Assembly (NCBI GenBank): GCA_001179505.1
Contig: CDMY01000499.1
Span: 62,001 to 126,000 of the forward strand
From: Vitrella brassicaformis CCMP3155
Lineage: Eukaryota > Protista > Chromerida
Length of the DNA stretch: 64,000 bases
Direction of reading: 5' to 3'
Position 1 is the stretch's first letter. Each line of letters starts with the position of its first letter. The translations under genes were made by a program, and so were the position numbers. The notes beneath the pieces are model-generated. The model ran no database searches and had not been told where the DNA came from. It saw only the letters and a list, made by a program, of their open reading frames with translations. Of the stretch, positions 36,835 to 61,151 are shown piece by piece.

Positions 36835-39800
36835 ATGGAGGAGGACTTGTCGGGCGACGATGAGGCCGACGTTGGGCGCATGGATCTCGTCAGCGTCAGC
36901 TGCCTCAGCTCTCAAGGCCTGCAGTGCGCATTCTTCAAGGGATCTGCCGAGTCCACCCGGACGCTCGCCGCCAGGCTCATGAGCCGCTCCATCTCTGCCA
37001 GTTTGGTGACAAGGTCGATAGAGGACGAATTCGCAGACCCCTCAGCGCCGTTCGCCATCGTTCACCCCTCGCTGAGCAAGACGATCGTCGTCAGCCTTCT
37101 GTCCATCGCTATCGATGACCCTTTCGCTGCCCGCCCTGACGTGTGGCGATTCGCCAATGGCAAACGTCTGACCCTCTCGCCGTGGCCCTCTCGAGCGGCG
37201 CAGAGCGCGGTGCTTGAGGCCTTGATCAAGGGCGGGGCTGGCGTGGATGGACATGCTCAAGAGGACAATCGCCCCATGAAGGTCGCTGTGGCATCAGCAA
37301 ACAAGGAGGCCACCAATGTAAGAGAAAAGAGGGGCGGGAGAGGGAGAGAAGCCGGCCGGCATTCATACCCGCCCTTCTCTCGTCCTGTCTCGTCTTATCT
37401 GTCTGCAGATGTTGCTCAAGCACAAGGCCCGTGTGCACGGTTTGGAGCTCATCTACCCGCCCAGCAGCGCCGAGCGGCTCCCCCAGCCGTATGCCGCGTC
37501 ACTACTCAAGATATACAGGCAGCTGCTGTTCCACGATCGCAGCCTTGCCACGGAGAGGGACGAGGCGGGATGCACCGCTCTGCACTTGCTGGGGCAGGCC
37601 AGGCTGCATGACGACATGGTGCGGTCGGCCATGCGGCAGATCGCTGAGGCGTCCAAGAACAACAAGATGATCATCTACCCAAACAACAGGAAGGCCAAGG
37701 GACGCGCGAGAGGGGCAGAGGGAGAGGGCTGGACGGTCCGCTCGGTGGCGCGCCGCTGCATTGCGGGGGTCAAGGGTTTCCTCTGGTCGGCGTTTTTCTC
37801 CTGCCTTCTCGCTTTGGCCATCCTCATTCCCATCGTGTACTGCGTCATTCGGGTGCCTTTATGCGTCGTGTGGAGCGTCGTCACCCTCCCCTTCTCGTCT
37901 GCCCGTCATCAAATCGCTGAGGATGTCGCCGAATGCGTCGGTGGCGTGTCGTTCATCGTCGGCAACACTTGGCGCGTGCTGGCCGGCCAGGGCGTCGAAG
38001 TGCCGCAGGATATCTTCGAGCATGTGAGTGGTGACACGGATGACGACGCTGGCGATTCGTGGTTCATCGACAAGTACATAGACCTCCTGGTGGAGCATGG
38101 GCTGTCCCTCATGAATGAGAACGACAGCAGAGACACACCACTGGACTTCGCGGCTCCAGCTGGGTCGCGGGCAGTGGTCGAGCACCTGTGTCGCTCCCTG
38201 ACCCAGAAGGACATCAACCGTGTGCATCCCCGTTATCGGGTGACGGCGCTCGGCGGCGCGGCCATACGGCTGCGGCAGCTCACATACGAGAGCAAGAAGC
38301 ACCCCGCCTCGCGAGAGCACATCAGCGACCTGCAGCACGTGACCCGCACGTTGCTGCAGCACGGCGCGTCTCCCTCTCTGCTGCCGGCCGGCAATGCCAT
38401 GCAGAGACAGGCACAGGGACTAGTCATGGACATACACAGAGAGATGCAGCAGGGACAGAACGGTACGCATGTATGCACCCCAGAGCACCTATCCCATCTA
38501 TCCGTCATGTCCTCAATGTGTCTCTCCTTCTCCATGAGTGCAGTTGCCAAGAGTGCGAGCGCCCAGCCGCCGTCATCTGCTGCCCCGCCTTCACCCTCAC
38601 CCTCACCCTCACCCGTACCGCCACCCGCACCCGCACCCGCACCCCCTCCCCCTCCTCAGCAGACCACCACACGCAGCGCCACGACAAAAGGCGGCCGGAA
38701 GGGAGGCGCCCAGGCCACAACCACCAGCAGCAGCAGCAGCACGGACGAGACACAAGAAGAGCGGGTCAGGCGGCTGACTGAGGAGGTGAGGGCGCTGAGG
38801 ATGCAGGAGGAGCTGCTGCGAGAGGAGGCGAGGGAGAGGGCCGTGAGGGAGAGCAAGGAGAGCAGGAGCAAGAAGGGAGGGGGCAAGAAGGGCAAGGCGG
38901 GTGGTCACGGGTCTGGGGATGGGCGCGCACCTGGGGCCTCCCATACCACTCCTACGGCTGCGGAGCCGTCCACAGCCAAGGCAGATAGGTGAGCAACGCA
39001 CTCACAAAGGGCTGGCCGGTTGTTTGCTCGTCCATGATGTCTGTGTGGCCTCTCTGCCTGCCTGCCTGTCTGTCAGTAATAGTTCGTGTGTTGACGTTGA
39101 GGGGCGTGCCGATGAGGACTCATCCCCGGCAGCTGCGACGCCCGGTGCGGATGATGGCGGCTATGGCAGTGAGGATTTCGCACCATTCGTCACCGTCACT
39201 CACACCAGCAAAAAGAAAAAGAACAAAGCCGACAAACTCGCGTAAGCCTGCGGCAGGAACGATATGCAACCTTCTTGTCTCCCTTGCATTGATGAACGCT
39301 CTTGTGTGTGTGTCTGTGTGTCTGTCTGTCTGTCTGTCTGTGTGTCTGTCTGTCTGTCTGTTATCCTCTCAGGGCAGCGAATGGTGCTTGTGCCAGTCGT
39401 GCTGCGGGCGCTGCCAAGCCACACAACCACCGGTACACAAGGAAAGGGATTGATGGGCGCCACGAAGAGCACCTTATCCATCTGTTGATGTGATGTTTCC
39501 CTTTCCAGCAGTCCGCCCCCTCTCGTCCCCACACATAAGATCGCAGGGTGAGAACACATCAGGGATACGCGGCCTTCAAAGCGGCTGCACGCACTCCATG
39601 TGTCATTGTGTGTTGTCAGATCGTTGGCTAGTTTGTCGACTGGCGACATCGGGAAGGCTCTGCCCACTGCATCGGTGTCCTCGGCCACAGCAGCAGGCGA
39701 CTGGTAGCACCGCCCACCAAAAGCTCATGGCTGCATGGCATGCATCGATGAGAGCTTTCCTGTCATTTGTTTGCAGCACGGGCGAGACGCCTCGGGGGCA

Positions 39801-40416
39801 CAGCACTAGCGGCACGGCTGCACCTTCTTCTGCCAACCCCACGGCGACCGGCATCGAATCGAGGTGCGAGACATGGCAAGGAACGGGTGGAGGGGGGTTC
39901 GCAGGATGCGACGCATTATCCACTGGACCTCCTTGTTTTGGTTGTCGTGTCCAGGTCGCCTGCTGAGGATAGTAAGGACCGTCTCGTCCACCAGCTACAG
40001 CAACAACTGGACGACGCCAGGCGAAAGTGAAATAAACAAACATGAAACACGAACCACGCATGTATGTGGTCTGTCTCTCGTTGTCTGCCAGGCTGGCCAA
40101 GGCCACTGCGGACCAGCAGCCGTCCACTGAGCGCCATCCGGACACCGACTGCATCATATGTGACGGCGACCACGGCAAGGCCACCATCATGATCATCCCC
40201 TGCAGACACATGTGCGTCTGCACCCACTGCTACACACAGTGGAAGGCCAGGCACCAGCAGGAGGTGGCCGCGGCGAGGCAGCGGCAGGCGGCCGGGTCGA
40301 CAGCAGCTCTGCCCAGGTTTGAGTGTCCGTGTTGCCGTGCCGATGTGGTGTTTGCGGGAACCAGGGAGGAGGTGCTCAAGTGGGCTAACCAGCCTTACAA
40401 ATGGCAGCTAGACTGA
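36835..40416 (+). CDS. Ankyrin-repeat protein with hydrophobic insertion, coiled coil and C-terminal C3HC4 RING (putative E3 ligase)
   Basis: The head has WPSRAAQSAVLEALIKGGAGVD, GCTALHLL, DTPLDFAA and TRTLLQHGAS. The last exon has CIICDGDHGKATIMIIPCRHMCVCTHC...FECPCCR. Confidence 0.88.
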
Positions 40417-40806
40417 CGTGAGTGCTCAGGGGTGGGTGAGGGTGTTGGATGCATGAATGGGTGTGACAGTTCTTCATGCCTGTGTGGACGCCGTGTCTGT
40501 TGTGGACGGACGGACGGATGGATGGCTGGAATCGAGTAAGCGAATTGATGTCCATCAGTCGAATCCAGGACACCACAACACACACACACGGATGGACACA
40601 CACGGATGGACGCAGCGTACCATCCTTCATCTATGTGTGTGGTGCTCGGCACAGCTGTGTCGTGCCACATGAGAACTAGAGCTAAACACACTACTCACTG
40701 CTATAAATGGACACTCATGAATACACACATTCACGCACAGACGCACCACCGCCACCATGAACGAAAAGAGCGCCGACAGGAACATCTGTCTGTCTGCCCA
40801 TCATCT

Positions 40807-43800
40807 CTACTCTTGGTGCGGGAAGAGGATGTCGGCGGCCTCGCTCGTGCCCAGCAGCAGCTCACACGACCTCTTCAGCTCGTCCACAATCGCCGCTCTG
40901 GCTCGGCTGCTCCTCGTCAGGGGCACGCACATCGCCATGAGGGAGAGGTCCGATATGTCATGAGACCGCAGCGACCGCGAGTGGTCGATCGCCTCACGCA
41001 TGGCCCTGGCGCCCTCCTCCTCCCGAAAAGTCTCGTAGAAGATGAAGAGACGCAGGGCATGCAGCCTCGATATCATGAGGGTGTCGATGTTCAGCCCCCG
41101 CACCCTCTGCAGCATCTCGTCCACCTCGCGCAGGTCGCTCGCTTTTCGCCAGCTCTTGGAGTTCAGCCGCTGCTCCACTTGCTCGATGACCGACAGGGCG
41201 TGGGGGCTGTACTGGGGCTCGGGCAGCTGATAGTGGCGTGCTATCGCCCTCTCTTCGGACGGGCTGCGATCGAGCTGGTCCCAGTAGGAGACGGTGACCT
41301 CGTTACCGCGGGCGATGGGGCGGACGGCACGAACAATCAGGAGGTCTTCAACACAATACCTGCGCGCATAAGGCAGAACATATGAGCCTGAGCCGTCTCG
41401 ACAGTATCTTCTGGTGAGCGCGCGGCTTACCAGATGGCATTGCGCTTCATGCCGGCGTGGTTCAACAGCGATGGCAAAGGCCACACACCCCCTGCAGGAC
41501 AACACCAAGGGCATACGCACATGAAAAGCCATCCACCCCATCCATCCATCCATCCATTCTTCGTGTGACATTGTATCACCTGACATGAGCATCGGAGGAA
41601 GCGAGCCCTGGATGGAGGTCTCAATGATATCGTCAGGGGTGCGGATGTTGAAGTCCAGCAATCGGCGGAGGTGGCCAGGGTCGCTGTCCATCTGTGCCAC
41701 AGGCGGACCGAACTCCTCCCCGTTGGGAGAGCCCACTACTCGCGGCAGCAGCGGAAACTCCACAGTCAGCCCGAGACACGTCTCGGGGGCGGGAGCGGCC
41801 CTTCTGATGGACTTCCTGTGGGCCATCACCGTGACGGCCGACGGCTGTCCCCTGCCGGGCGGCAGACAGCACAGCTGAGAGACCAGCCGAGGGTGCCAAA
41901 CGTCACACTGCGAGGCCAGCCGTGCCACCAGCCGCTCGTCGAATCGCCCACTGTCTTGCGACGATGCCCGCTCCACCACGACGGCCTTCTGAACGGTCAG
42001 CAGCTGCCCCACCCGGACATTTGCTGTGGCAATGAGGGCCGGCTGGCTGTCGGGGGCGGGGGGACTGAAACCGACTGGCCCGACGTACTCAGCCACGTCG
42101 ATGGGCGTGGTCCTGCCGAGCTGTCTGTTCTGGGCACTGCCCATTGCTTGTCGGTAGATGGCCGCCCAGTCATAGTTGCCGGTGGCGTTGGCCGCATGGG
42201 TGCGGATGCGCCGCTGCAGTGTGGTGATGTCTGCCGCCATCTGACCCTCCAGCTCCTGGCAGACACACACATACAGGCACACCACTTTCCCCTCTCTGTC
42301 TCACGAGTGTCCCATTGCCAGCTTACGTGATTGGTCAGCGCCTGGACGACGGCATCGGCCGCGTCGAAGAGCCGCTCCGCCAGCAGCCCCTGGCCCAGCC
42401 GAATGAGGGTCTTCTGCTGGATGACACTCAGCTGCTGGCAGGGCCCCTTTAGGCAGCTCAGATGAAATGCCGCGGTGGCACAGCCGACGGCGTCCGGCCC
42501 TCCCTCCTTGATGAGCTTCGGCTGGAGCAGACACGCAGCCGCGTTGCTCAGCAGTGCCACGAGGGNNNNNNNNNNNNNNNNNNNNNNNNNNNNNNNNNNN
42601 NNNNNNNNNNNNNNNNNNNNNNNNNNNNNNNNNNNNNNNNNNNNNNNNNNNNNNNNNNNNNNNNNNNNNNNNNNNNNNNNNNNNNNNNNNNNNNNNNNNN
42701 NNNNNNNNNNNNNNNNNNNNNNNNNNNNNNNNNNNNNNNNNNNNNNNNNNNNNNNNNNNNNNNNNNNNNNNNNNNNNNNNNNNNNNNNNNNNNNNNNNNN
42801 NNNNNNNNNNNNNNNNNNNNNNNNNNNNNNNNNNNNNNNNNNNNNNNNNNNNNNNNNNNNNNNNNTGCCACGAGGGTCGACACGTCAGCGGCCGCCAAAC
42901 CAGCGGTGAAGACGTCACGCGCATCGGCAAATCTCTCGCCGTCCTGCAGCTGCTCTCCCTCCGTCAACGCATCCGTCACTTGCTGCGGTGCGTCGACGAC
43001 CGGCTGGTCTGTCGAGCACAGCTGCGTCATGGCGTCCGTCATGAGTGCCGCGATCGCTCCTTTCGATGGCAGATCGACGTCTTGGTCATCATCGTTGTAA
43101 GCTGCACCGGTGAGCTGCGCGATGAGGGGCTTGTAGACAATCTCAGCAGTGTGCTGGAGGATGGCATACTTGGTGCCTGGCTCGATGGAGTGTGGGGGCG
43201 GGAGGATGCGGAGGGCGGTGGTGACGTCGATGAAGGCAGCGAGGTAGCTGTCGAGCACAATCAGGCACTGGGAGCGGCGAATGAGCAGCTCAGCAATGGT
43301 CTCACGCTCCATGCGGATGCCCTGACACCATAAAGAGAGACAACAGCAGGAAGCCGTGTACATCGACGGCTCAGACGTGACAGTTATTGTGTGTGTGGGC
43401 CACCTTGAGATACGAGCGGTAGGCGTCGAGATACTTGTCGGCCTTGAACAGAGCATTGCCAGCGCTCTTCCATCTCTCGGCAGTGGACGGCACAGACGCA
43501 GAGGCAGATGAGCTCGCAGCAGCAGAGGCCGGAGGAGCAGCACTCCTGCGAAGAGAAAAGCAGCCACAGACAGCGATATAAGACGTCAGAATGATGGTGG
43601 CGCTGTGCATCACGTCGATCGAGTGTGTCTGGCACACGTGTCGGCATTTGACGAAGAGGGCTGCTGAGGACCTTTATCGAGCTGAGCTGACGACGGACTG
43701 CATACACCACAGACAGAGCACGTTATACGACGTTCGTTCATGAGCCCCCACCGTCGTCTTCCTCACCTGGCGGATGCAGCATTGGACGACCGTCTCTCTG

Positions 43801-45039
43801 AGCGCATCTCTCGCTGCGCGTCAATCACGAGGCTCCGGAGGAAGCGCTGATGAGGGCCGGCTGTGGGCATCTGGTCGATGGAAGCGCCATGCTCTAGCAG
43901 CACGCGGACGACGCGCCTCTGCCGTCTGATGGCTTCTTCCGGCGCCCCATCACTAAGCTGCTTACTGAGCAGGGTCCCAGCTGCCATCAGCAGAGACCGC
44001 CCGTTGGCCTGCGTCGATCCCAGACGCTCACACAGCCACTCCACCACTACCGGCGTGGCATTTAATGCCGCGCACTGAAGTGGCGTCATACCGTCCTCGT
44101 TGACCGCATTGAGGTCAGCACCGAAGTCGACCACCAGCTTCAGATATCGGCGCACAAATCTAGCCGACAGCATCGTTGCGGCCTCGTCACTCAGGGCCAT
44201 GCTGTGCAGAACAGTCCCATGACCCTGAAGCTGCTCGCCATGCCTCCCGGTGCGGTAGGACAGGATCCGCTCTGTCGCCAGTGTCCGGTCGTGTGTGAGC
44301 ATGCGGTGGTAGACATCGAGCAGGGCGTCCTCGTACTCGCGACTCGGCTCGTCTGGGAAGGCGCCTGGGAGCACCAGCGCACCAACGCCTCTATGCGCAC
44401 CATGGCGGATCAGCACCTCAGCTGCTGCCACATTGGCATATGCAGTGGCGACTCTGATGGGCCGGACGGGGGGCGTAACACGGATGTGGTCCAATGTCTC
44501 GTTCACATCTGCTCCAGCTTCGATGAGGGCCTCGAGCACGGCTGCTTGGAGCTCGCGAGAGGGCCACCGAGGGAGGTGAAGCGTGTGCACAGCAGACTGG
44601 AGTTCGCCTCGGCGGCTGCCGAATCGCCAAAAAGGCACAGCGCTGTTGGTTGGGTCGTCAATGGCGTAGAAGAGCACCGGCACCGCCGAGAGTGGTCCCG
44701 CACCAATCACCCTCAGCGCGACTCCCACTGTGGCATCAGCCTCATCGTCACCTTCACCGCCACCTCCACACAGACGAGTGACATCACCAGCCGAATTGAA
44801 GGTCCGACACATGACTCCACACACGAGTTGTCGGCTGCGAGTGAGGCCTCGGCTGTCACACTCCAGCGCCATGACGGCGAGCCCCTGCGGCTCCAGCAGC
44901 TCCCTCAAACCGCTCTCGCATGGAAGCTCCTCCCCCCACTGCGCAGGCGCAGACGAAAAACACACACACGTAAGGTGGGATGCAATCACTCGCGCACATT
45001 TTCCAGCTGTTTCCTTTCGCTCCGCACCTGACTAGCCAT
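40807..45039 (-). CDS. Ankyrin-TPR-SET domain protein, copy A (SMYD-like methyltransferase fold)
   Basis: The 12-nt first exon MASQ (45039-45028) is followed by the ANK exon 44938 to about 43770 and a linker exon. Then come TPR segments (AERWKSAGNALFKADKYLDAYRSYLK; LLSNAAACLL) and SET motifs GVWPLPSLLNHAGMKRNAIW and LLIVRAVRPIARGNEVTVSYWD. All junctions checked between the ANK and TPR parts are in frame. Confidence 0.85.
42566..42865. other. Assembly gap (300 N), probably spurious
   Basis: Both flanks share the 11-mer TGCCACGAGGG. Confidence 1.
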
Positions 45040-45221
45040 CAGTTCTGACGTGCGTCAAGAACCTCGCCAAACACTGTAGCCAGAAACAACGAGTCGCGTA
45101 TCAAAGCAACGGAGGCCTTTTCCGCTGTCACCTGCTAGACGACGGCGATAAGACTGCTAGCGGGCGTGAAGAGGCAGCCGCCACCCGACGTCCTCCAGAT
45201 AAGTCAGACGTCGACAACAAC

Positions 45222-45352
45222 TGCACACCAGAGAGACAAAGACAGAGAGTTCTTCCGCAGGTATCGCCTTTTCTCCTTGGTGTTGCCTTCGGTGCAGTGG
45301 CTGACCTGTGTAAGCCGTCCTAGAAGCCCTCGAGGTCACGGCTTCGCCTCAG
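45222..45352 (-). promoter_or_regulatory. Putative 5' UTR exon/intron of gene A, homologous to that of gene C
   Basis: ACACAG|GTCAGCCA donor near 45305 and TGTGCAG acceptor near 45222. The 29 bp at 45283-45311 match 54260-54288 at 26 of 29 positions. Confidence 0.55.
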
Positions 45353-46206
45353 ATCTACCACAAATTCGGCGTCAGAGTTGGTTCTACGACAATCACAGAT
45401 CAAAGATACCTTCACTGCCAACGAGCAACCTGGTAGCGAAAGCGCCGAGGCTGAGCCGTTCGACGAACGCGAGCTTTTCTGCCGATCGGAATGCCGACAA
45501 AACCGCGTGCATGAGACTAGGGATGGGCCTGCGGTTCGCATTCGCTGCACCACGACGTGACGGCGTTGAAAAATGAGGAATAGATCTATCAGCTGACGAC
45601 GGAACAACGCAGTGGTGCATGCCCGCTGTGACTTTCATAGTAGGTTTCTGTCTTGGTTCATGGGTGCGTCAGTGATCGCACCTTCTTTTCCATGCTGGTG
45701 TTCCCATCCAATCTCTGGCAGGGGGAAGGCATTCTTCGATTCGATTCGTATGCAACGTCCGCACACCACAACGAGTCACACGTCCATCCACTCGCACAAA
45801 CACAGAGGGAGAGAGCAAAAGAGAGAAAAGGCAGTCGATATTCTCTCTGCTGGCAACAAACAGGAGAGAGTGGAAGGGGCAGAAGTCGCCTCACTCAGCC
45901 AGTCGTCCACCCCATCGTCTGTGTCTGTCTACGTCCATCTGCCCACTACAGCGAACGTCTCGCACGATGTCGGCAAATCCTACAGGGAAACAAACGTACA
46001 CACACACATGAAAGCCGACGTGTGTGTGGTCTGCACAGACGTGGGATGTCTGTCTGCCTGACTGCGTCTTCAAGTGGAGCGAAGAGAAGACAGGCATCTC
46101 ATGTGTGTGGATGGATGGATGTGGAGGCCCATCGATACAAAAAATGGCGAGAGAGAGAGAGAGAGAGAGACAGCCATCCACCCAGCCATCCGGGTGTCAT
46201 CGGCAC

Positions 46207-47324: not shown

Positions 47325-47355
<31 letters not shown>

Positions 47356-47360
47356 AACCA

Positions 47361-50300
47361 TCATCTACTCGACGACAAGCGCGGGCAGAGGATGTGGAAC
47401 GCCTCGGCCGTCCCGAAGATGACCTCACAGGACTTTTTGATTTCGGTCAGCGCCTCCTCCCGGTCGCTGGCCGAAATCAAAAGGTCCTGTGGAGAGGAGA
47501 GTACTACTGCCAGCTGGCCGATGTCATGGATATCGTAGGATAGCAGTGCACGAGAGGTGGCGACCGACTCGCGAGTCGCCGCCACCGCCTCCGTCACTCG
47601 CCCCGCCGCGAACAGACAGGGCGACCGATATGCCAGCAGCTTCGCGACCAAGATGGTGCGGACATTCAGGCGGCGCACTTGCTGCAGCATCTCGTCCACC
47701 TCACGCAAGGTCTCCTCTCCTGGGTCGGGCTTCTCCTGCATCATCTGCAGCCGCTTCTCCACCTGCTCGATGACCTTCACCGTAAGTGGGCTGTAGGGGT
47801 TGGGCGAATCGGGAAGGTCGAAGCGCCTCGCCAGCAACCTCTCGGCAGCCAGGGTGGTGAAGAGTGGGTCCCAGTAGGAGACGGTGACCTCGTTGCCGCG
47901 GGCGATCGGCCGGACAGCACGGACGACAATCAAATCCCCCTCCTCGAGGATATACCTGCGCGCATCAGGCAGCACAAATGAGCCTGAGCCGTCTCGACAG
48001 TGCCATTCGCGTGGGCCTGGGGCTTACCAGATGGCATTGCGGCTCAGTCCGCCGTGGCTCAATAGCGATGCCAACGGCCACACACCCCCTGCATAGCAAA
48101 GTCATTTCAAACACAGTCCTCTGTCGGCAGCTCTCATTGTTTGTTTCTCACTTGACGCTTTCAGACAGGCGACACCCATGCCTCGCAGGGAATTCTCGGC
48201 GCCGATGTCATAAGCAATGTGGGTCTTGAAGTCCAGTAATCGGCGGAGGTGGTCAGGGGCGCTGTCGATCTGTGTCACGGGAGGACCGAACTCCTCCCCG
48301 GTGGCCGACCATATGAACCGCGGCACCAGGGGAAAGTAGGCTGGAGGCAGCTCTAGACATGTCTCGGGGGCTGGAGGCCCCCCTATGGCGGACGGCTGTC
48401 CCCTGCTGGGCGGCAGACAGCACAGCTGAGAGACCAGCCGAGGGTGCCAAACGTCACACTGCGAGGCCAGCCGTGCCACCAGCCGCTCGTCGAATCGCCC
48501 ACTGTCTTGCGACGATGCCCGCTCCACCACGACGGGCCTCTGGACAATAAGGAGCTGCCCCGGCTGGACATCCTGTGTGGCGACGACGCTCGGCTGGCTG
48601 TCGGGGGCGGGGGGACTGAAACCGACTGGCCCGACGTACTCGCCAACGTCGATGAGCGTGGTCCTGCCGAGCTGTCTGTTCTGCGCACTGCCCATTGCTT
48701 GTCGGTAGATGGCCGCCCAGTCATAGTCGCCCCGAGCGTTGGCCGCGTGGGTGCGGATGCGCCGCTGCAGCGTGGTGACATCTGCCGCCATCTGACCCTC
48801 CAGACCCTGACGGACACACACACAGGGGTCATCTGACTCCCCTTTCTGTCTCATGAGTGTCCCATTGCCAGCTTACGTGATTGGTCAGCGCCTGGACGAC
48901 GGCATCGGCAGCGTCGAACAGCCGCTCCGCCAGCAGCCCCTGGCCCAGCCGAATCAGCGTCTTCTGCTGGATGGCACTCAGCTGCTGGCAGGGCCCCTTT
49001 AGGCAGCTCAGATGAAATGCGGCGGCCGCACAGCCGACGGCGTCCGGCCCTCCCTCCTTGACGAGCTTCGGCTGGAGCAGACACGCAGCCGCATTGCTCA
49101 GCAGTGCCACCAGGGTCGACACGTCAGCGGCCGCCAGACCAGCGGTGAAGACGCCACGCGCATCGGCGTAGCTCTCGACACCCTGCAGCGCCGCGCCCTC
49201 CGTGAGCGCATCCGTCACTTGCTGCGGTGCCTGGACGACCGGCCGATCTGTCGAGCAGAGCTGCACCATGGCGTCCGTCATGAGTGCCGCGATCGCTCCT
49301 TTCGATGGCAGATCGACGTCCTGGTCATCATCGTTGTAAGCTGCACCGGTGAGCTGCGCGATGAGGGGCTTGTAGACAATCATGGCGATCTCCTGGAGGA
49401 TGGCATACTTGGTGCCTGGCTCGATGGAGTGTGGGGGCAGGAGGATGCGCAGGGCGGCCGTGACGTCGATGAAGGCACTGAGGTAGCTCTCCAGCCCGAT
49501 GAGGCACTGGGAGCGGCGAATGAGCAGCTCAGCGAGGTACTCACGCTCCGCTCGGATGCCCTGACACCACACAGACATCACAGCAGGAAGCCGTGTGCAT
49601 CGACGGGGCAGATGTGACAGTTATTGTGTGCGTGGGCCACCTTGAGATACGAGCGGTAAGCGTCGAGATACTTGTCGGCCAAAAACAGAGCATTGCCAGT
49701 GCTCTTCCATCTCTCGGCAGTGGACGGCACAGACGCAGAGGCACTCGCAGCAGGTGCTGCAGCAGCAGCACTCCTGCAAACAGGAGAGCAGCCACAGACA
49801 GTGATATACGACGTCAGAATGATGGTGGCGCTGTCCATCGTCTCAATCGAGTGTGTACGGCTCACGTGTCGGCACTTGACGAAGAGGGCTGACGGGCGTC
49901 CTCGTCGATCGGAGCACCTGACCGGCTGCACACACCACGGCCATAGAGAGCAACCAGTGAGGCATTCGTCAGCCGCCAGTATGGATCTTGTCTACTTACC
50001 TTGTGGATGGAGCAGTGGAGGGCACTGACGGCCCACTCGGGTCAGAGCCACCCGCACCCTTCGCCGCAGACTGCTGCATCCCTTGCTGGATCTCCAGCAC
50101 TAGGTTGCGCGCGTATTGCCAGCTGGAGTTGTCATTGGGCAGGAGGCCGATGTCCGCACCATATCGCAACAGCGTGCGGATGATCTGCCTCTGCCGGTCG
50201 ATCTTCTCGGGTGGGGTTCCCTCTTCGCTGAGCTGCTCCGCGAGGCGATGCGCCGCCGCACCCAGTGCCGTCCTCACCAGAGCCTCAGCACTGTTGTCCT

Positions 50301-51512
50301 CGCTGTTGATCTCGTCGGGCCCGAGCCGCTGACACAGCCACTCGACCACTGGGGGGCCACCAAAGTACGCAGCCATTCTGAGGGGCGAGTTCCCATCATC
50401 GGTTCTGGCATCGAGGGAGGCACCATTGGCCGCCAGCAAGTCGAGATAGCCGCGCATGAAGGCTGCCGACAAGCCGGGCGGGGCCTGAGAGGCACGGTGC
50501 ATGGCCGTGAACCCAGAGAAGCGGCCGCTCGCCAGTGTCGGTTCGTACTCGAACAGCCGACGATAGACTTCGAGCAGGGCTGTCTCGTATGCAGGCGTGG
50601 GATGTGACGGCGCTGCATTTCTGGGGACGAAGCTAATCGCCAGGGCCGAGGATATTCTTCTCGCCCCATCCGACGTCTTGACCAGCGGGGCACCATCCCC
50701 TTCATCCCGCACAGCCGCCCCACTCTCGAGCAGCACCTCGGTCGCCGTGACGTTGGCCATCATGTGGGCCACATTGAGGGGACGGAGGTATGGCGCGCCC
50801 TCATTCACGTCAGCACCGCACTTGACGAGCGCCTCCAGGACATCACGCTGCACTCGGCGAGAGGGCCAGGTGGGGAGCTTGAGGTGCTGGGTCACAGCCG
50901 ACCAGAGGGCAGGATGGCTGTCGAACTCGTCGTCCACTGCGAGCCACAGCACACTCACACGGGCTGGCCGGAGGAGCTGGATCAGTTGCTTCCCTTCACC
51001 GTTCAGAACCGTCACTGGCTGCCTGCTGAATCTGATAGCTGTCTGGGCATCAGCCCCTCTCTCACGACACAGCCGCCATACCTCGCCACCTGTGAGGGTG
51101 CGGCACATGGTCCGACACAGCAGCTCTCGAGATCCATCGGTACTGGTGGCCGTGGGTGCCTCGCAATAGATGTCGAACCTCGCCAGAGAGAAACCTTGCT
51201 GCCCCAACAGACTCTCCACTTGCTCCAAATGAGAAGCGCCGACCCCATTCTGAGCCGCCTGATTATATGGACAGTGAATCGATCCCACATACACACTGAG
51301 TCTCATTCTTCGCAGATCGCGTACCCCCTTGCTGCCTCGTCGCTTCAGGTTTGTCGAGGCCCCAGCAGCGTCAGACGGACGTGTATCCCCGACTTGCGCA
51401 CTGACAATAAGCGAAAACAATAAGGCAATTCCCCCGTTGTTTGTGATTGTGGCGTGTGATTGTGGCGCGTGGCTTACAGAAAGGGCCCGGCAGATGATGA
51501 TGAGGATGCCAT
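47361..51512 (-). CDS. Ankyrin-TPR-SET domain protein, copy B
   Basis: First exon MASSSSSAGPF(L) (51512-51478, GTAAGC donor), ANK exon 51400 to about 50001, then TPR/SET exons closely matching copy A. SET motifs GVWPLASLLSHGGLSRNAIW and DLIVVRAVRPIARGNEVTVSYWD. Confidence 0.85.
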
Positions 51513-51516
51513 GGTG

Positions 51517-54150
51517 TCAACCAGAAGACTGAGAGTCAACAGGACACCATGGCCATGGCATTGCTGCCTCCCCGCGACTGTCTTCCACTGCGCACCTGTG
51601 TGCCCTGGTCGGTGACTCGGACGTCTCTCCATCCATCGCCTGAGACGGCATCCACATGCCGGCAGACTGCCTGTGCCGTCGGCTGCCTCGCCGACCCCCT
51701 GTGATGCCCTCATCTGCCAGCCGCCCAACGCCCCCTGCTGCCTCCGTCTCTTGTGGCTGGTTGCTACTGGTGGTGGTGGTGGTGGTGTTGATGGGCGTGT
51801 TCTTGCCCAGTGGACCATCGTGTGCTGAGGGCGGGAGGGGGGGCGGGGCGGCCGATGAGGATGATGAGGTGCTCGCGCACGCCGCAGCGCCAGACTGGCC
51901 AGAACAGACAGAAAGGCACACAAAGGAAGGATATGCAGCCGCTGCACAGCACGTGTCTATCGGTTCACCTGGCTGCTATGAGTGTCTGGGAGTGCGAGAA
52001 GACCGCCGCCCGCCGATGTGGACCGATTGGAGGCATCCTGAAGCAGACGGGCCCGAGTTTCGGCGGCCTCTTTGATGATGAGCCGCTGGTGCTCCGACAG
52101 GCCGCCCAGCAGGATGGCAAACATGCTGATGCACGCCTCGGTCACCTCCTCGAAGCCCACTGCCCCAGCCCACACGACGGGCAGGTCAGCCGAGCCGAAT
52201 GCACCGTGAGGTTCCAGGCTAAGACCCACACGCTCGCTACCGGCGGAACCGCAGGTAGCCTGAGATGCCGCCCTCAGCTGCCGCAATGCGAAGCGCTCCT
52301 CGGGTTGGCGGGGACGAATAAGATCTGAGAGCTGTGTGTCAGTCTTGATGAGTGCCAGAGTGACGGTCAGTGCGGTGGTGAGAGGGACGGGGCGGTGGGG
52401 TTGGGGTGGTGCGTGGGGTAAAGCTACGCCGCGAGCAGCTCGCTCGTTGGCCACAGAATCTGTCACACACAGAGAAGAAAGACAGATGTACACGTGTGGA
52501 CGTGCTGCCCTTCCCTTGCCCGCCTGCATGGCCGCCTGTTTGCATACCTGCGATTTGCCGCAAGAAGGCCTGCATCCTCTTGCCGGGGTCTATGGGGTCT
52601 GTCGGACGAACAAGCTCCGCCCACACAGGTGAGGCCACCAGGCCATCCACCACGGCCCGCCCAGCTGACAGTGCCGTCTGCAGTGCCGTGTCTGTCGCGG
52701 CAGCCGCCCACTGAGTGTGGTGCAGGCCGGTGATCTCGAAGACAAAGCCGATCGTGTCCATCGAACCACCAGGAAAGGACGCTTTCTTGACCACACTGAC
52801 GTTGGTCGACTCGACCTTCTTGCTCTCCTTCTTGGCCATTGTCTTGGCTGTCTGTGCCGCCTGCTTGACTTCTGCCGAGAGCTGCTGCTGCTGCTGCTGC
52901 TGTGGGGCGGAGGGGGGAGGGCACTCGATGATGGACGGAAGGCAGCGGGGCGAGGGGGATGAGGAGGGAGGCCGTTGGGACATCTCTCGCTGTATGTCCG
53001 ACACCAAGCTGCGTGCTTGCTGGGTCTCCAGCACTAGGTTGTGAGTGCGCATGTGGTCAGGGGACGCACCATGCTGAAGCAGCAGGCGGACGACCTGCTT
53101 CAGTCTGTCGATCTCGTCCGGGCGCTTCTCGTTCAGCATATAACTAAGGTGCACGCCCGCGAGTTCAATTGGCAAGAGATCCTGCCCATTTCTCTTGTTG
53201 ATCTCCTCCCTCACAAGCCGCTCGCACAGCCACTCCACCGCACTCGGTGCACCCGCCATGACGGCGAAATCAAGGGGCGTGACGCTTTTTGCACCCTTGG
53301 CGGTGAGGGAGGCGCCGTGTTGGGCCAGCAGGTCTAGGTACGAGCGCATGAACTCCGACGGCAGTGACCGCGACGCCGCCATGTGCATGGGGGTGGCCCC
53401 GCTGTCCTTGAGCTGCTCAGTCGCCAGTGTCCGGTCGTGGTCGAACAGCCGGCGATAGACGTCGAGGAGGGAGCTGTAATACTGTGGGCCGGGGGATGGG
53501 GGAAGGGCACTTCGAGGCGGGAGGTAGCCCAGCTGCAGGCCGCGCACAGCCGCCTTAGCCTTGAGCAGCACCTCCACAGCCGTCGGGTTGGCGCAATCGC
53601 GTGCCCACGCGAGGGGTGCCAGGTTGCCGCGGTTCACGTCTGCCCCATTGGCGATGAGCGCCTCGAGCACCTTCCGCTGTGTCTCACGAGATGGCCAGGG
53701 AAAGAGGCGGAGCTCCTTGTCGTTCACATTCAAGACACATACAGGGCTGTCGACCCCGTCAATGGCGATGGTGAGCAAGCCGTAGGGCTCCACTTGATCG
53801 CCCTCTTTGGCCACGCTAATGTTCATGTCAGCATCAGCTCCTTTCTCATGGCAAAGCCTTGCGATTTGGGAGTCTGGCTCGGGTGCGCGGCACATGATGA
53901 CGGACGCCAGCCGGCGGTTCGCGGGGCTGTTGCGCTCACTGCCATCCCTGCCGCTGATCGTGGTGAGAGAGAAGACCTGCAGACTGAGCGGGGCATCAAG
54001 TTGCCGCTCGTACGATCGCCCCTCGTCAGTCTGAATGGACAAAGCAAACAGACGAGGAAGAGATCTCCCCTTTTCCTTTTCCTCCTTCCCACTGACCTGG
54101 CTGGACGGCGGCATGCGATCTGCCGACGAATGAGAGGCGGCAGCCGCCAT
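51517..54150 (-). CDS. Ankyrin-repeat protein with unrecognised C-terminal domain (gene C)
   Basis: ORF 52339-54150 has the family ANK head (WPSRETQRKVLEALIANGADVN, GATPMHMAA, VTPLDFAV). It splices in frame (ATCGCAG|GTATGC) to DSVANERAARG...VTEACISMFAILLGG and a low-complexity last exon ending at TGA 51519-51517. Confidence 0.8.
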
Positions 54151-54199
54151 CTCACGCCCACCAAAGCCAATCAGTCACTCCAGCCATCCTACCATCCAC

Positions 54200-56730: not shown

Positions 56731-57199
56731 GTGATGCGACGACGACGCCTTCGGTGGGTGAGAGATCTGAATGAATCAAAAGAGGAAGGACATACAAACG
56801 AGGAAATGGCAATCAGTCAGTCAGACGAGTGCCATGGCAGGGCGGGATGCTCTGCTTACCTCAGCCAGACACCGTCACAGCAGAGAGGCGGGGGGAGTGA
56901 GCCGTGGTGAATGAGTGGCTCTGCAGACACACAGCACAAGCGTCATGCAGCACCTGCCAGACTGACTGACCCGCCACGAGGGATGCTTAGCTCGCACGGG
57001 GGGCCCGTCCTTTTTGTTTCGGAGGAACTTGAAGGGAGGACCCATACCGAAACACCATAATTGCATCCGGTGCTCAGATGAGAATACGGGTGAACGCTAT
57101 GTCGGAGTGGACACGAAATGACACCCCGTCTTCTCATGTCTTTTCTGCGGGGATGCCGGCCGGTGTGTGCAGTACAAGTAGTTGATTTGTTCACTGACG

Positions 57200-60100
57200 A
57201 TGTCGGCCGCCTGCTCCCAGTTTACTGAGAGGAAGAGTTGCTTGAAGAGTTATGTCTTCGACAGCACCAATCCTGCCACTACGGAGCTGGCGACCATGAT
57301 TGCTTGCCGAACTCTAACTTCGACGGAGGATGTCGCTCGTCTCGTCGCGGCAGGAGCGGATAGCAAGGCGGACCTCTATATTATCTTCGGCTCTGACGAC
57401 AAGAAGCTTGTCAACTTGCTGTCTTTGGCCATCGATAGTGAGAACTTCACCAATCCTGTCTTTTGGCATGATGACAAGCAGCTGAACCTCCCAATTTGGC
57501 CCTCTCGCGAGCTGCAACGGGTGGTGCTCGAGGCGCTCATCGCCTATGGAGCAGACGTGAATGGCGGCAGAGCTGAGCCCCATCCCCTTGTGGCGGCTGT
57601 CCTGTTTGCAAACATGACGGCTCTCGAGGTGTTGCTCAGCGCTGGGACGGCGACACGGGGGCTGCGACTAGCCAGGCTCCCACCTCTACCAGAACGCCGT
57701 CCAGGGATCACTCTACAAAAGCCGAGCCGACAGTACGAGACCGCTCTGCTGTCTGTATATCGCCGATTGATGGAGCATGACCCGGCACTCGCCCACGAAC
57801 AGCTCAGTGACGGAATGCTCTCCATGCACTCGGCAGCTGCAGCGAATGCGTCGTTTCTACTCTCGCCAGAGTTCATAGGGGACTATCTGGACATACTGGC
57901 CGCTTACGGCGCGTCTCCCACCGCGAAGAGCGCCCAGGGATTCACGGCACTCCACTGCAACACGATTAAGGGTGCATCGTCTGTAGTAAGATGGCTGTGC
58001 GAAAAGCTGGGGCCTGAGGAGGTCGCGAAGGAGACATCAGAAGATGGTACTTTGGCAGCCGCCGGCGTTCATCTCAATGAGCTGCTGAGACAGAAGGCCT
58101 CTCCCAATGTGATCAACCGACACAAGCAGGCGATCCGTATTCTGCTTGCCCACGGTGCATCCATCGCATCACTCCCGACAGGCACACCAAAGGCGCACCA
58201 CGTGCGTAGGCTGTTACAAGACATCCAAGAAGAGATGCAGCCGCCGGCGAGTGACGCAGCACAGCAACAATATCAAGGGGGGAGAGATGCGGTAACGACG
58301 ATTCGGAAGACTTACCCGCAGCCCGCTCAGATGGAGGAGAAGATATCGTCTTCCTTGGAGAACTGTATCATTGTCCATCAAGGCCGGAACAGCCCGACCC
58401 TTCCCACGATTTTAGTCACTAGGGAACTCGCAATCAAGATCACAAATCGAAGCCTCACATCAGCCGACGACGTGGCGCGTCTCGTCGGAGGAGGGGCCGA
58501 TGTTACAGCGGGTGTCAGTCTTCGTGTCGACTCTGAGTCGTCCTACGGACCCGTTAGTTTGCTCACTGCTGCCGTCAAAAATACCTACACGTCTGTTGAT
58601 GTGTGGAGAGACGCGAGTGGGGAGATGATAGAAGAAGTGGTGAAGGACTTGAAGCTGCCTGCGTGGGAATCCCGTGAGACACAGCGGGCAGTCGTTGAGG
58701 CCCTGATCGCTGCTGGAGCTGACATCGACGGTGGATCGTTTGAGCATAGTGGGCCCATTCATGACGCCTGCCGGTATGCCAACGTGATGGTTGTTGATGC
58801 CTTGCTGACGGCTGGCGCGGCGACAGTCGGGATGCGCTTGGCTTCTCTCCCAGCATCTAATGAAGGCATTCCCTCCCAGCCGAGCCGTGAATACGAGGAT
58901 GCTCTGCTAGACGTCTATCGCCGAGTGCTTAATTGTAACCCCTCCCTCGCCAGCGAGCAGGACGAGAACGGTGTCACTCCTATGCACAGCGCGGCGCTGG
59001 AGAGGGTGTCGCTTTCACTCTCATGCGACTTCATGCGCCTCTATCTGGACCTGTTAGCTGCGCACGGCGCCCCGCTTACCACGAGAAACGCACGGGGAGA
59101 AAGCCCACTTGACATCGCTGTGGCTGAGGGAACTCCGGATGTTGTCGAGTGGCTATGTGGCAAGCTGGGGCCTGAGGAAATCAACAGGAAGGATCCCACC
59201 GGGGCCAAATGGCCAATGTACACCGCGATCGGCAGCCTTTATATGGGGCTGAGAGACAAGGCCCCGCTCGAGGAGATAGACAGAGCCAAGCAAGTGATCC
59301 GCACGCTCCTGGAACATGGTGCATCAGTTGACACTTTCCCCACCAAGACGGCATTGCAGCGCCGCGTTCGCAGCTACGTCCTGGAGATCCAACAAGACAT
59401 CTGCAAAGGGAGCCACACACAGCAGCAAGAGATTGAAGCTGTAACGGCCGCCAAGATCGCCGAGGAGCTCATAGCTGAGGAGGCGAAAGAGAAGGCCAAG
59501 AAGGCCAAAAAGGGCGGTGGGAAGGGCAGCAAGACCGGCAGCGGGACCCAGCCTGCATCTGCTCGGCGAGTTCCGGTGTGTGAGGGGGTTGGTCAAGACA
59601 AGGAGCTGTCGGTGCCGTCCGTATCATCAGACAGCAAGTCGGCAGGCATACTTACAAACGATGGCCTTACAAACGATGGCGAGACAGACGAGTGGCCGCT
59701 TCCCACTTCATCTGCCGATCCTCAAAGGTAAGCGCATGCACACACAGTGAAGACGCTCTATTGGCGTGGGTACTCTCTCTCGGTCTGTGCTGTCTGTCTG
59801 AAGCGTGTGCACTGGTGTCCCTTCATCATCGTGTAGTGTTGCATCTGCTGTGCCTGCCCCCGCCACTCCCATGGCCGAGGCCAGCGATGGCGAGTTCATA
59901 CCCGTGGTCTGCAGAAAGAAGAACAAGAAGAAAGACAACAAACAGCAACGACAGCCGCTTGTCGCCACATGCCAGGAGCCGTACAACCAAAGACAGATAC
60001 TCAAGTAATTTGAGGCCCATTGATGCTCTGGCTGGCCACTGTATGCGTCTTGTCTCCCCTCTGTGTTTTGCGCCATGCAGGACTGATGGTGTTGCCACCT

Positions 60101-61151
60101 CCTCGTCTGGCGGCACTGGCCTAGACACGCCCACGCCAGCACAATCGCGCAGACACCGGTACACACGCGCACAGATGGGCGTGTTCCCAGCTCGGCTGCC
60201 ATCGTGTCCGTGTCATGTCTGCTTTAGCGGCCCACCGCCCCTCGTCCCGACGTATGTACGGCCGTCGGTCAGCCCTTCTGCATTGCCTCCCCGACCACAG
60301 CATGCCCCTCCCCCCGCACCTGCGCGTCCGCTCGGCCCATCTGCATTGGCCCGTCAAATGCAGTGTCCCCCTCCTGCGGCTCCTGTCAGCCCACTCGATT
60401 CATCTTTGCGTCATAATGCAGATCAGGCACCAACACCGACCACCCACAAGAACAGCGGCAGCAGCAGCCATGTGCCAGTGTCGCCCCCTGCTTTCTCGGC
60501 CTTGGCCTCTTCGGTCGCCTGTCAGCCATTCCCATCGGCTACTACCGGTTTGCCTCGATGCGGAACAGAGAGGGACACGATTGCCGCTCCTGCTGTTGCT
60601 GGTTCGGCGAGTGACAGCGAGCGTCTGGTGGACCAACTATGTCGGCAGCTTGAGAAGACACAGCTGGCTGCCAGACAGAGGGAAGAAAAGGCCAAAGAGG
60701 AAAAGGATGCGCTGATACGGCAGCTGCAAGAGACACAATGGAAGTGAGCCAATTGACGCACGTATCAAGCGGGCCTGTCGTACACGATGTCCATGTGTCT
60801 CATGCTGTTTTATGCAGGCTTGCTCAGGCGAAGACTCAACAGCAGATGGAGCAGCACAGCTCACCATCATCGGGCAGCGGCGCCCCTCTGGCCAGTGCAG
60901 CGGACGATGGCGAACATTTGAAGTGTGACGTGTGCATGGACAAGGACAAGAACACTCTACTCATCCCATGTGTAAGCACACCTGCACCCACAGAGATGCC
61001 CCCATGTCTCCGTTGATCGTGTGTGTGTGTGCAGCGTCATTTGTGTCTGTGTGGTGATTGTGCTGGTCGGCTGATGAGCGGCCCTTTGGCAAAGCGGCTG
61101 TGCCCGAGATGCCGACAGCCGATCACAGACACACAGGAGGTCTTCGTGTGA
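57200..61151 (+). CDS. Double ankyrin-module protein with coiled coil and C-terminal C3HC4 RING (putative E3 ligase)
   Basis: The 2.5-kb first exon has two ANK modules (WPSRELQRVVLEALIAYGADVN; WESRETQRAVVEALIAAGADID). The tail exons end LKCDVCMDKDKNTLLIPC|RHLCLCGDC...LCPRCRQPITDTQEVFV*. Confidence 0.9.

What the first reader, a model, noticed from the sequence alone, without database searches (positions are those of the whole stretch)
36835..61151. Modular cluster: one ankyrin 'head' family spliced to interchangeable enzymatic tails (RING, TPR-SET, unknown)
Seen: six copies of the same roughly 350-aa module occur in five genes within 24 kb. The shared pattern is (M/A)CR..., W(P/E)SR..Q..VLEALI..GA.V, LL.VY.R...D..LA.E, Y+DLL...GA, PL..A...VVE(W/H)LC..L and R.LL.HGA. 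Each copy sits in a very long exon (one is split by a single intron) in an otherwise intron-dense genome. The heads are strongly diverged from each other. The multi-exon tails are RING (36.8 kb and 57.2 kb genes), TPR+SET (A, B) or an unknown domain (C). Established: RING domains are ubiquitin E3s, SET domains are lysine methyltransferases, and ankyrin repeats are substrate-binding scaffolds. Inference: this is a domain-shuffling system in which variable recognition heads are coupled to ubiquitin- or methyl-writing effectors, resembling innate-immune or effector repertoires. The long intron-poor head exon may spread as a mobile or retroposed cassette.
Basis: partly seen in the sequence, partly recalled or inferred. 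Interest (0 to 1): 0.8.

Follow-up and report, generated by a model that had tools for sequence, protein, structure and literature searches.

The report
Ankyrin heads joined to enzyme tails
The alga Vitrella brassicaformis has a private family of at least 125, perhaps about 300, ankyrin "gripping" modules, each in one long exon; this cluster holds six of them joined to ubiquitin-ligase or methyltransferase tails, but the combinations are few, old and mostly copied whole rather than freely swapped.

Summary
Six homologous ~320-aa modules (35-43% identical) lie at 36.9-59.5 kb. The one folded, head C, is a complete ankyrin solenoid (pLDDT 91). Two public transcripts show heads spliced to tails: gene A (ANK-TPR-SET) and the 57 kb gene (ANK-ANK-RING). 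The transcript of gene A also crosses the N gap, whose flanks overlap by 11 nt, so the gap is an artefact and the frame is continuous.

- The genome (Vitrella brassicaformis) holds at least 125 heads. Most carry an orphan 210-aa C-terminal extension in the same exon.
- There are four tail types: that extension, RING tail, TPR-SET and a "C linker".
- The head tree nearly matches tail type (5 changes, minimum 4). Architectures are therefore stable and spread by whole-gene or block duplication.
- Gene A is the one clear mismatch: head dS is 1.28 against gene B, tail dS 0.18.
- The "unknown tail" of gene C is a recurrent linker. It probably runs on into gene B, which would make four genes rather than five.
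- Retroposition is not supported: copies keep a 5' intron and have no poly-A tail.

Binding-face segments reach pN/pS of about 1-1.25; framework helices stay near 0.4. This scan has already noted other fast-evolving ankyrin families elsewhere in this genome. Targets are unknown.

The parts
36627..40413 (+). Gene 1 (annotated CEM18267.1): ankyrin head + RING tail
   Evidence: Protein P0032 maps here exon by exon. Head profile matches lie at 36967-37425 and 37352-38494 in two frames. The annotated intron is 37321-37405. No transcript was found for this gene.
40150..40413 (+). RING finger of gene 1 (C3HC4, with a long insert before the last Cys pair)
   Evidence: PF13920 scores 31.7 bits against a cut-off of 27. 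The C..C...C.H..C..C motif starts at 40150, and the last CxxC is visible.
40526..45455 (-). Gene A: ANK-TPR-SET, 10 exons, supported by a transcript
   Evidence: Transcript contig L051 matches at 98-100% as exons 45455-45306, 45223-45132, 45076-45028, 44941-43767, 43700-43613, 43545-43403, 43323-42318, 42258-41579, 41494-41428 and 41360-40526.
43767..44941 (-). Head exon of gene A (single 1175-nt exon)
   Evidence: Its best relative anywhere in the genome is only 45-48% identical.
42566..42865 (.). Spurious assembly gap inside a TPR exon of gene A
   Evidence: The flanks repeat the same 11 nt and align contiguously to paralogue B. Transcript L051 crosses the gap with an 11-nt overlap.
41428..41494 (-). 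67-nt micro-exon that encodes the SET 'NH' motif of gene A
   Evidence: It is an exon in L051. The encoded motif reads ...LLNHAG... in A and ...LLSHGG... in B.
47364..51530 (-). Gene B: ANK-TPR-SET (second half of annotated model CEM18269.1)
   Evidence: Exons of P0015 were mapped. The head exon is 51258-50002. The tail is 78-86% identical in DNA to the tail of A, introns included.
51598..54033 (-). Gene C: ankyrin head (52945-53907) + 'C linker'; first half of CEM18269.1
   Evidence: The linker recurs after heads L008, L013 and L023 and after L006.
57265..61692 (+). 57 kb gene: two ankyrin heads in one exon + RING tail, 6 exons, supported by a transcript
   Evidence: Transcript contig L031 matches as exons 57265-59727, 59801-60005, 60078-60158, 60227-60744, 60812-60971 and 61035-61692. 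The heads lie at 57290-58273 and 58430-59434.
60812..61148 (+). RING finger of the 57 kb gene, split by an intron
   Evidence: PF13920 hits in frames 60654-61013 (16.4 bits) and 61017-61148 (29.3 bits). The transcript ORF P0001 carries PF13920.

Best explanation
This is a local cluster of a large ankyrin gene family that appears to be private to Vitrella. The shared ~320-aa head is a complete ankyrin-repeat solenoid, that is, a protein-binding scaffold, and it is almost always encoded in one exon. In most of the at least 125 scored copies the head is followed in the same exon by an orphan 210-aa extension. In a smaller subfamily of about 22 heads, which includes all six here, the head is spliced instead to one of three multi-exon C-terminal parts: a RING tail (a probable single-chain E3 ubiquitin ligase), a TPR plus SMYD/AKMT-like SET tail (a probable lysine methyltransferase or a degenerate relative), or a linker that leads to a second head.

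The inferred mechanism is that the head selects a target protein and the tail marks it. The architectures arose a few times and then spread by duplication of whole genes and gene blocks at the DNA level. Heads drift fast at the usual ankyrin binding face. Gene A is the one visible recombinant: an old head carrying a tail that is young relative to its neighbour B.
For: Six heads are present. The AlphaFold model of head C has pLDDT 91.4, and its best structural matches are DARPins, FEM1B, tankyrase ARCs and the EHMT1 ankyrin domain.

Family size. The head profile gives 125 scored matches among 327 candidates, almost all without stop codons. The orphan extension gives 153 matches. All 20 family members I looked up are Vitrella proteins, apart from one unnamed environmental contig.

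RNA links heads to tails. RING is confirmed. A profile of the SET tail hits SMYD3 at E 1.5e-5 and Toxoplasma AKMT at 6.8e-4. Pfam SET matches 4 of 9 tails and TPR_2 matches 2 of 9.

The head tree is nearly congruent with tail type. The RING tails are homologous along their whole length and lie downstream of at least 10 heads of this subfamily. The block [C-type head + linker][head + TPR-SET] recurs at four places, and a fifth copy has lost the second head.

Gene A versus B: head dS 1.28, tail dS 0.18, introns about 85% identical. pN/pS is 0.35-0.48 in framework helices and reaches 1.05-1.25 in two TPLH-like segments.
Against: No enzymatic activity or target is known. The SET domain is below Pfam's cut-off, lacks the post-SET cysteines, and in gene B has Ser in place of the Asn of the NH motif. 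The AlphaFold model of the SET part failed (pLDDT below 50 over residues 1-255).

Tail assignment for most loci rests on coordinate proximity, not on RNA. Only 123 of 327 head candidates were scored, and the tree covers 29 heads, so more architectures may exist. Some heads of the main type carry RING tails. Whole-head omega of 0.5-0.8 could reflect relaxed constraint rather than adaptive change.
Confidence: 0.7

Rival explanations
1. This is an active domain-shuffling repertoire. Head exons are exchanged among tails, or inserted as cassettes, often enough to generate new head-effector combinations, as in immune-type receptor families.
For: Gene A combines an old head with a tail as young as the B/L007/L009 burst, and the switch lies in or near the intron after the head exon. 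TPR-SET tails also occur behind non-ankyrin N-termini in at least 4 genes. One paralogue differs by the presence or absence of the second head. One environmental contig has a whole family gene where the Vitrella genome has an empty site.
Against: The head tree needs only 5 label changes against a minimum of 4. The AU test does not reject placing head A with the other SET-linked heads (p 0.155). The head that is absent in the C292 paralogue is an internal deletion that left both exon edges, so it is a loss and not a cassette insertion. Tail gene conversion between neighbours A and B explains gene A equally well.
Confidence: 0.15
2. The head, or the whole one-exon gene, spreads as a retroposed or transposon-borne unit, which would explain its lack of introns and its copy number.
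For: Heads are free of introns in more than 120 copies. Similarity between main-type copies ends about 100-450 nt upstream and 3-90 nt downstream of the ORF in most pairs. A filled site can be compared with an empty site: L055 against C677.
Against: Main-type copies keep a short 5' intron with GT-AG ends, and a transcript confirms it. One copy even starts inside that intron. There is no poly-A tail, target-site duplication or terminal repeat, and no transposase or reverse transcriptase in the unit. Nearly all copies have intact ORFs with omega below 1. The genome paper reports only 1.5 Mb of transposable elements in Vitrella (PMC4501334).
Confidence: 0.08
3. The heads and tails are unrelated neighbouring genes that gene models have joined wrongly.
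For: The annotated model CEM18269.1 merges C and B, while the paralogous pairs elsewhere are annotated as separate genes. Transcript contig L052 retains introns.
Against: Two independent transcript contigs carry uninterrupted ORFs across the head-tail junction: 1067 aa for gene A and 1071 aa for the 57 kb gene.
Confidence: 0.05

Closest known systems
Ankyrin-RING E3 ligases (plant XB3/XBAT family, animal Mind bomb); comparison from my own knowledge
   Same: An N-terminal ankyrin-repeat domain is followed by a C-terminal C3HC4 RING of the PF13920 type. The ankyrin part is thought to choose the substrate.
   Different: No sequence relationship beyond the generic domains was found. The head here is a Vitrella-specific solenoid of fixed length in one exon. 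The tail has its own conserved motifs and a coiled coil before the RING. Two heads can precede one RING.
G9a/GLP (EHMT1/2): ankyrin repeats + SET methyltransferase
   Same: An ankyrin domain and a SET domain sit in one chain. The EHMT1 ankyrin domain is among the structural matches of the head.
   Different: The SET domain here is of the SMYD/AKMT type, not the SUV39 type. It has no pre-SET or post-SET zinc clusters, and a TPR region lies between the head and the SET domain.
SMYD3 and Toxoplasma apical complex lysine methyltransferase (AKMT)
   Same: They are the best matches of the tail profile among solved structures (E 1.5e-5 and 6.8e-4). They share a split SET core followed by a helical, TPR-like C-terminal domain. 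That domain is the only confident part of the model.
   Different: No MYND finger was detected. The post-SET cysteines are absent (alignment). The NH motif is altered in gene B. The N-terminal ankyrin head and TPR region have no counterpart.
FEM1B and tankyrase ARC domains (ankyrin substrate receptors)
   Same: They match the head over its whole length as ankyrin solenoids (TM 0.46-0.55). In those proteins the ankyrin groove binds short peptide motifs of substrates.
   Different: Sequence identity is 15-22%. Those proteins work within cullin complexes or with a PARP domain, not with a RING or SET domain in the same chain.
Other fast-evolving ankyrin families of Vitrella noted earlier in this scan (kinase-ankyrin, exon-per-repeat ankyrins)
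   Same: They are in the same genome, are large private ankyrin families, and show faster change at the binding face.
   Different: Those families have one repeat per exon, or kinase partners. Here the whole solenoid is one exon and the partners are RING, TPR-SET or an orphan domain. I did not test whether any of them is the same family.

Membership tests
Ankyrin repeat proteins | Pfam ankyrin models above the gathering score | tested here: met
   Ank_2, Ank_4 and Ank lie above their cut-offs in five of six heads, e.g. Ank_2 at 61.5 bits against 27.3. The head of gene 1 is below the cut-off.
Ankyrin repeat proteins | Helix-turn-helix solenoid fold over the whole module | tested here: met
   The AlphaFold model of head C has pLDDT 91.4 and pTM 0.88. 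All top Foldseek matches are ankyrin solenoids at probability 1.00.
RING finger E3 ligases (zf-C3HC4_3) | Pfam PF13920 above its cut-off, with all eight zinc ligands | tested here: met
   Gene 1 scores 31.7 bits (cut-off 27). The 57 kb gene has the domain split over two exons (16.4 + 29.3 bits). The Cys/His pattern is visible.
RING finger E3 ligases (zf-C3HC4_3) | E2-dependent ubiquitin ligase activity | not testable with these tools
   This needs an in vitro ubiquitination assay.
SET-domain lysine methyltransferases | Pfam SET (PF00856) above its gathering score of 22.4 bits | tested here: not met
   Tail of B in P0015: 20.8 bits. Tail of A: 17.9 bits. Four of nine family tails match at E <= 0.01, best 1.1e-4. 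UniProt names P0015 and P0019 'SET domain-containing'.
SET-domain lysine methyltransferases | Profile similarity to a solved SET enzyme | tested here: met
   The family profile hits SMYD3 at E 1.5e-5 (27.7 bits) and AKMT at E 6.8e-4.
SET-domain lysine methyltransferases | NH(S/C) cofactor motif and the conserved Tyr of the E-L-x-x-x-Y strand | tested here: inconclusive
   Gene A has NH and gene B has SH. The Tyr in '...EVTVSY' is present in both.
SET-domain lysine methyltransferases | SET fold | tested here: inconclusive
   In the AlphaFold model of the tail the SET part has pLDDT below 50. Only the helical C-terminal domain is confident.
SMYD subfamily | MYND zinc finger inserted in the SET domain, and a post-SET Cys cluster | tested here: not met
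   No MYND hit in Pfam. The SMYD3 post-SET cysteines align to non-Cys residues.
TPR repeat proteins | Pfam TPR models above their cut-offs in the window's tails | tested here: inconclusive
   There is no TPR hit in the exons of A or B. TPR_2 matches 2 of 9 family tails (best E 4.8e-6). Matches to the CNS1 and CHIP TPR domains are weak (E 0.04-0.8).
Processed retrogenes / retroposed cassettes | Loss of all parental introns, a poly-A tail and target-site duplications | tested here: not met
   Copies keep a 5' intron. No poly-A or duplication is seen at the ends of the unit.
Innate-immune-type receptor repertoires (NLR-like) | A variable recognition domain joined to a signalling or oligomerisation module such as NACHT or NB-ARC | tested here: not met
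   Only RING, SET and TPR were found with the heads; no such module appears in any Pfam scan. Variable binding-face segments do exist.

The most novel reading that the evidence does not exclude
The family of at least 125, perhaps about 300, heads is a diversifying recognition repertoire. Each head would have been selected to grip a different partner (for example proteins of bacteria, viruses or the coral host) and to deliver a ubiquitin mark, a methyl mark or the action of the orphan extension. New copies would be seeded by a still unknown DNA-level mechanism that moves gene-sized units, as the one filled-versus-empty site hints.
Probability: 0.12. Interest if true: 0.7.

Novelty: new variant of a known kind. 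Interest (0 to 1): 0.42.

Why it matters
Ankyrin+RING and ankyrin+SET proteins are known kinds, so the mechanism is not new in principle. Four things are new here.
- One Vitrella-specific ankyrin solenoid of fixed length, kept in a single exon in an otherwise intron-rich genome, has reached at least 125 and possibly about 300 copies. It is neither described nor named in the genome paper (PMC4501334 has no mention of ankyrin in its main text).
- The same head occurs with four different C-terminal parts, one of them an orphan domain with at least 153 copies.
- Head-tail splicing is documented by RNA for two genes.
- There is one dated case of a gene with an old head and a young tail.

The family offers a natural set of ankyrin binders with E3 or methyltransferase tails, in a free-living relative of apicomplexan parasites, on which target recognition could be tested.

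For the scan, the result is also a caution. The apparent "interchangeable" diversity in one window came from three old subfamilies lying side by side.

Tried and rejected
- **Metagenome scan with the head alignment.** It returned only generic ankyrin proteins at 22-29% identity (short segments up to about 50%) and no family members.
- **Word-based protein searches.** They were swamped by generic ankyrin candidates. They returned few family members and no transcript for genes B, C or 1, so the C-B junction stays unresolved.
- **AlphaFold model of the SET-plus-C-terminal tail from a 9-row alignment.** The SET part has pLDDT below 50. I therefore ran no fold search on it, and it says nothing about the fold.
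- **Atlas search of the orphan extension.** No match above TM 0.31 and feature scores of 0.80-0.82, which is chance level.
- **Pfam on the C linker, on ORF 55663-56730 and on the non-ankyrin N-termini of other TPR-SET genes.** Nothing was found.
- **AU test forcing head A into the SET-head clade.** p = 0.155, so the tree alone does not prove that head A is foreign. The dS contrast carries that argument.
- **My alignment A5 of C linkers.** One row was mis-sliced (L013), so the 'ct' profile hits that overlap heads are artefacts and were ignored.
- **Joined exon models.** Every spliced protein I used (P0001, P0015, P0019, P0032, P0162 and others) was returned as such by the tools, and window exons were searched one by one by reference.
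Full report
**What is there.** The window is G000:C499:62001-126000 of a 72,700,666-bp assembly in 1064 scaffolds. That matches the published Vitrella brassicaformis CCMP3155 assembly exactly (PMC4501334), and database proteins name that organism.

A motif scan and a profile search find exactly six copies of one module in the window and none elsewhere in it. They lie at 36967-38494(+), 43766-44824(-), 49999-51120(-), 52945-53907(-), 57290-58273(+) and 58430-59434(+). The copies are 33-43% identical to each other.

Pfam recognises ankyrin repeats only in the C-terminal half. An AlphaFold model of head C, built from 29 family heads, is confident (pLDDT 91.4, pTM 0.88). It matches ankyrin solenoids over its whole length: DARPins, FEM1B, tankyrase ARCs, ankyrin-B and the EHMT1 ankyrin domain. 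The head is therefore one complete, divergent ankyrin solenoid.

**The gap.** The N run at 42566-42865 lies inside a tail exon of gene A. Its two flanks end and begin with the same 11 nt, and they align without interruption to the ungapped paralogue B. A transcript contig crosses the gap, and its two matches overlap by those 11 nt. The gap is a scaffolding artefact and the reading frame is continuous.

**Head-tail junctions.** Two public transcriptome contigs settle this for two genes.
- L051 (JGI 3300017148) is gene A at 98-100% identity. It has ten exons from 45455 to 40526. The head is one 1175-nt exon (44941-43767), and the ORF is an uninterrupted 1067 aa running from head to SET tail.
- L031 (JGI 3300017297) is the 57 kb gene. 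It has six exons: a 2.46-kb first exon holding both heads, then five short exons ending in the RING.

Genes 1, B and C rest on annotated models only (CEM18267.1 and CEM18269.1). Spliced proteins were used only as the tools returned them.

**The tails.** The RING is solid in both genes (PF13920). Four RING tails compared are homologous along their whole length. They share a short proline motif, a coiled coil and then the RING, and they fall into two subtypes.

The A and B tails are paralogues, and their domain assignments are weaker.
- Pfam SET stays just under its cut-off (20.8 and 17.9 bits against 22.4).
- A profile of nine family tails hits SMYD3 at E 1.5e-5 and the Toxoplasma apical complex methyltransferase AKMT at 6.8e-4.
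- 4 of 9 tails hit SET and 2 of 9 hit TPR_2.
- The NH motif sits in a 67-nt micro-exon that RNA confirms. Gene A has NH and gene B has SH; the strand tyrosine is kept in both.
- The post-SET cysteines are missing.
- A fold model of the SET part failed.

I therefore read the tail as a SMYD/AKMT-like SET domain of uncertain activity, preceded by a TPR-like region.

The "unknown tail" of gene C is not a one-off. The same linker follows heads L008, L013 and L023 and L006.

**The family.** A profile of five heads gives 125 scored matches among 327 candidates across the genome, and nearly all lie in open frames without stops. Most sit in ORFs of 570-620 aa in which the head is followed by a 210-aa extension. 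That extension is 77-92% identical between sampled copies, while their heads are 62-76% identical. It has at least 153 genomic matches and no detectable relative or fold match.

All 20 family proteins I looked up are Vitrella proteins or Vitrella transcriptome ORFs, except one unnamed ENA contig. The genome paper does not mention ankyrin in its main text.

**Are the tails interchangeable?** I built a maximum-likelihood tree of 29 heads: five of the window's six plus 24 from elsewhere. The split head of gene 1 and the partial head L020 were left out.
- It separates the extension-bearing clade (100/100) from a subfamily that holds the five window heads in the tree (100/100).
- Within that subfamily, the heads in front of TPR-SET tails (B, L007, L009, L010) form a clade (100/100).
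- The heads followed by the C linker (C, L006, L008, L013) form another clade (100/99).
- RING-linked heads form three clades in an unresolved backbone.

The tail labels need 5 changes where 4 is the minimum. Coordinates place RING-tail exons 0.3-2 kb downstream of at least 10 heads of this subfamily. TPR-SET exons lie downstream of five to six heads.

The block [C-type head + linker][head + TPR-SET] recurs at C499:272-279 kb, C292:66-74 kb and C356:322-329 kb as well as in this window. A fifth copy lies at C292:53-60 kb. Architectures are therefore few and stable, and they spread by duplication of genes and blocks.

**The exception, gene A.**
- The tails of A and B match at 86.5% and 78.5% DNA identity, introns included. 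The match starts inside the intron after the head exon, and the head exons give no nucleotide match at all.
- Synonymous divergence is 1.28 between the heads and 0.18 in a tail exon. The shared introns are about 85% identical.
- The tail value equals the head divergence among B, L007 and L009 (dS 0.15-0.21).
- Head A has no relative closer than 45-48%, and it branches outside the rest of the subfamily (97/93).
- An AU test does not exclude placing it with the SET-linked heads (p 0.155).

Either a young tail copy was joined to an old head, or neighbour B converted the tail of an old ANK-TPR-SET gene. I cannot separate these two readings.

**C and B: one gene or two?** The annotated model fuses them into a 1954-aa protein.
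- Evidence for two genes: the frame of C stops 4 nt before an ATG that opens "MAS...", like the start of gene A and of paralogue P0019. This fits the first-stage note s1-205625.
- Evidence for one gene: transcript L052, from the C292:53-60 kb paralogue, splices the last linker exon to that small exon and runs on into the TPR-SET exons, with some introns retained.

In that C292 paralogue the second head has been removed by an internal deletion. Both exon edges remain, so the change is a loss and not a cassette insertion. A double-head gene would also parallel the 57 kb gene. No RNA from this locus decides the question.

**Mobile or retroposed?**
- Main-type copies share only the gene itself plus about 100-450 nt upstream and, in most pairs, 3-90 nt downstream.
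- They keep a short GT-AG intron just upstream of or inside the start of the ORF. A transcript confirms it for one copy.
- There is no poly-A tail.
- One environmental contig (L055, ENA ERZ893784) has flanks 84-89% identical to two segments of C677 that lie 46 nt apart. Between those flanks it holds a 2.07-kb unit carrying a family gene. The junctions show no target-site duplication or terminal repeat, and the copy starts inside the 5' intron.

This is a gene-sized insertion or deletion at the DNA level. It is not a processed retrocopy, and the mechanism is unknown.

**Selection.** Whole-head dN/dS in close pairs is 0.39-0.83. Across nine independent pairs, pN/pS is 0.35-0.48 in the conserved second helices of the repeats. 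It is 0.75-1.25 in the segments between them, with the two highest values (1.05 and 1.25) over the TPLH-like turns that form the usual ankyrin binding face. This fits fast change of the binding surface but does not prove positive selection.

**Verdict.** Relative to known families it is a new variant of the known ankyrin-plus-enzyme kind, and it lies inside a very large, undescribed, lineage-specific family.

Noticed in passing
window 57583-57599: Transcript contig L031 lacks 17 nt that the genome has here, inside the first head. This breaks the frame in the transcript, so the called ORF starts later. The genome version keeps the conserved head sequence. It may be an allele, an assembly error or a rare variant.
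   Followed up: partly
window ~41195-41200: Transcript contig L051 has a 7-nt tandem duplication relative to the genome in the last exon of gene A. It shifts the frame and replaces the helical C-terminal domain with an unrelated tail in the transcript ORF (P0162).
   Followed up: partly
window 37652-38032: The head of gene 1 carries an in-frame insert of about 127 aa with a long hydrophobic stretch between two repeats; the other five heads lack it. The annotated model removes only 27 aa of it.
   Followed up: no
window 55663-56730 (-): A 355-aa ORF lies between gene C and the 57 kb gene. It has no Pfam match and is unrelated to the head family.
   Followed up: no
L021-L030 and about 150 further places in G000 (e.g. 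C674:25979-26614): An orphan 210-aa C-terminal extension follows most heads of the family. It has at least 153 genomic matches, is 77-92% identical between sampled copies, and has no Pfam, Atlas or fold relative.
   Followed up: partly
L055 (ENA ERZ893784 k147_2428487) versus G000:C677:77711-79789: An environmental contig from a close relative (flanks 84-89% identical) holds a 2.07-kb family gene at a site that is empty in V. brassicaformis, where only 46 nt of unrelated filler are present. There is no target-site duplication.
   Followed up: partly
L052:1-306 and G000:C292:60008-60328: The first 306 nt of this transcript contig match at least 10 contigs at 91-94% identity. They are either a dispersed repeat at the 5' end or a chimeric assembly.
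   Followed up: no
G000:C1040 (three places), C176, C333, C271, C499:149.7-152.2 kb: More divergent TPR-SET genes (39-48% identical to the B tail) have no ankyrin head. Their 390-510-aa N-termini have no Pfam match (P0164, P0165, P0167-P0169). For the closer copy at C499:149.7-152.2 kb no head was listed upstream.
   Followed up: partly
G000:C292:56070-56513 (transcript L052:2855-2989): This paralogue of the C-B block has lost the body of its second head by an internal deletion of about 1.3 kb. The deletion keeps both exon edges and leaves the upstream ORF open into the TPR-SET exons.
   Followed up: yes
G000:C278:82845-87516, C896:163-3791: In two places a RING-tail match lies upstream of a head on the same strand; one of them is in a 1560-aa open frame. 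This may be a further architecture.
   Followed up: no
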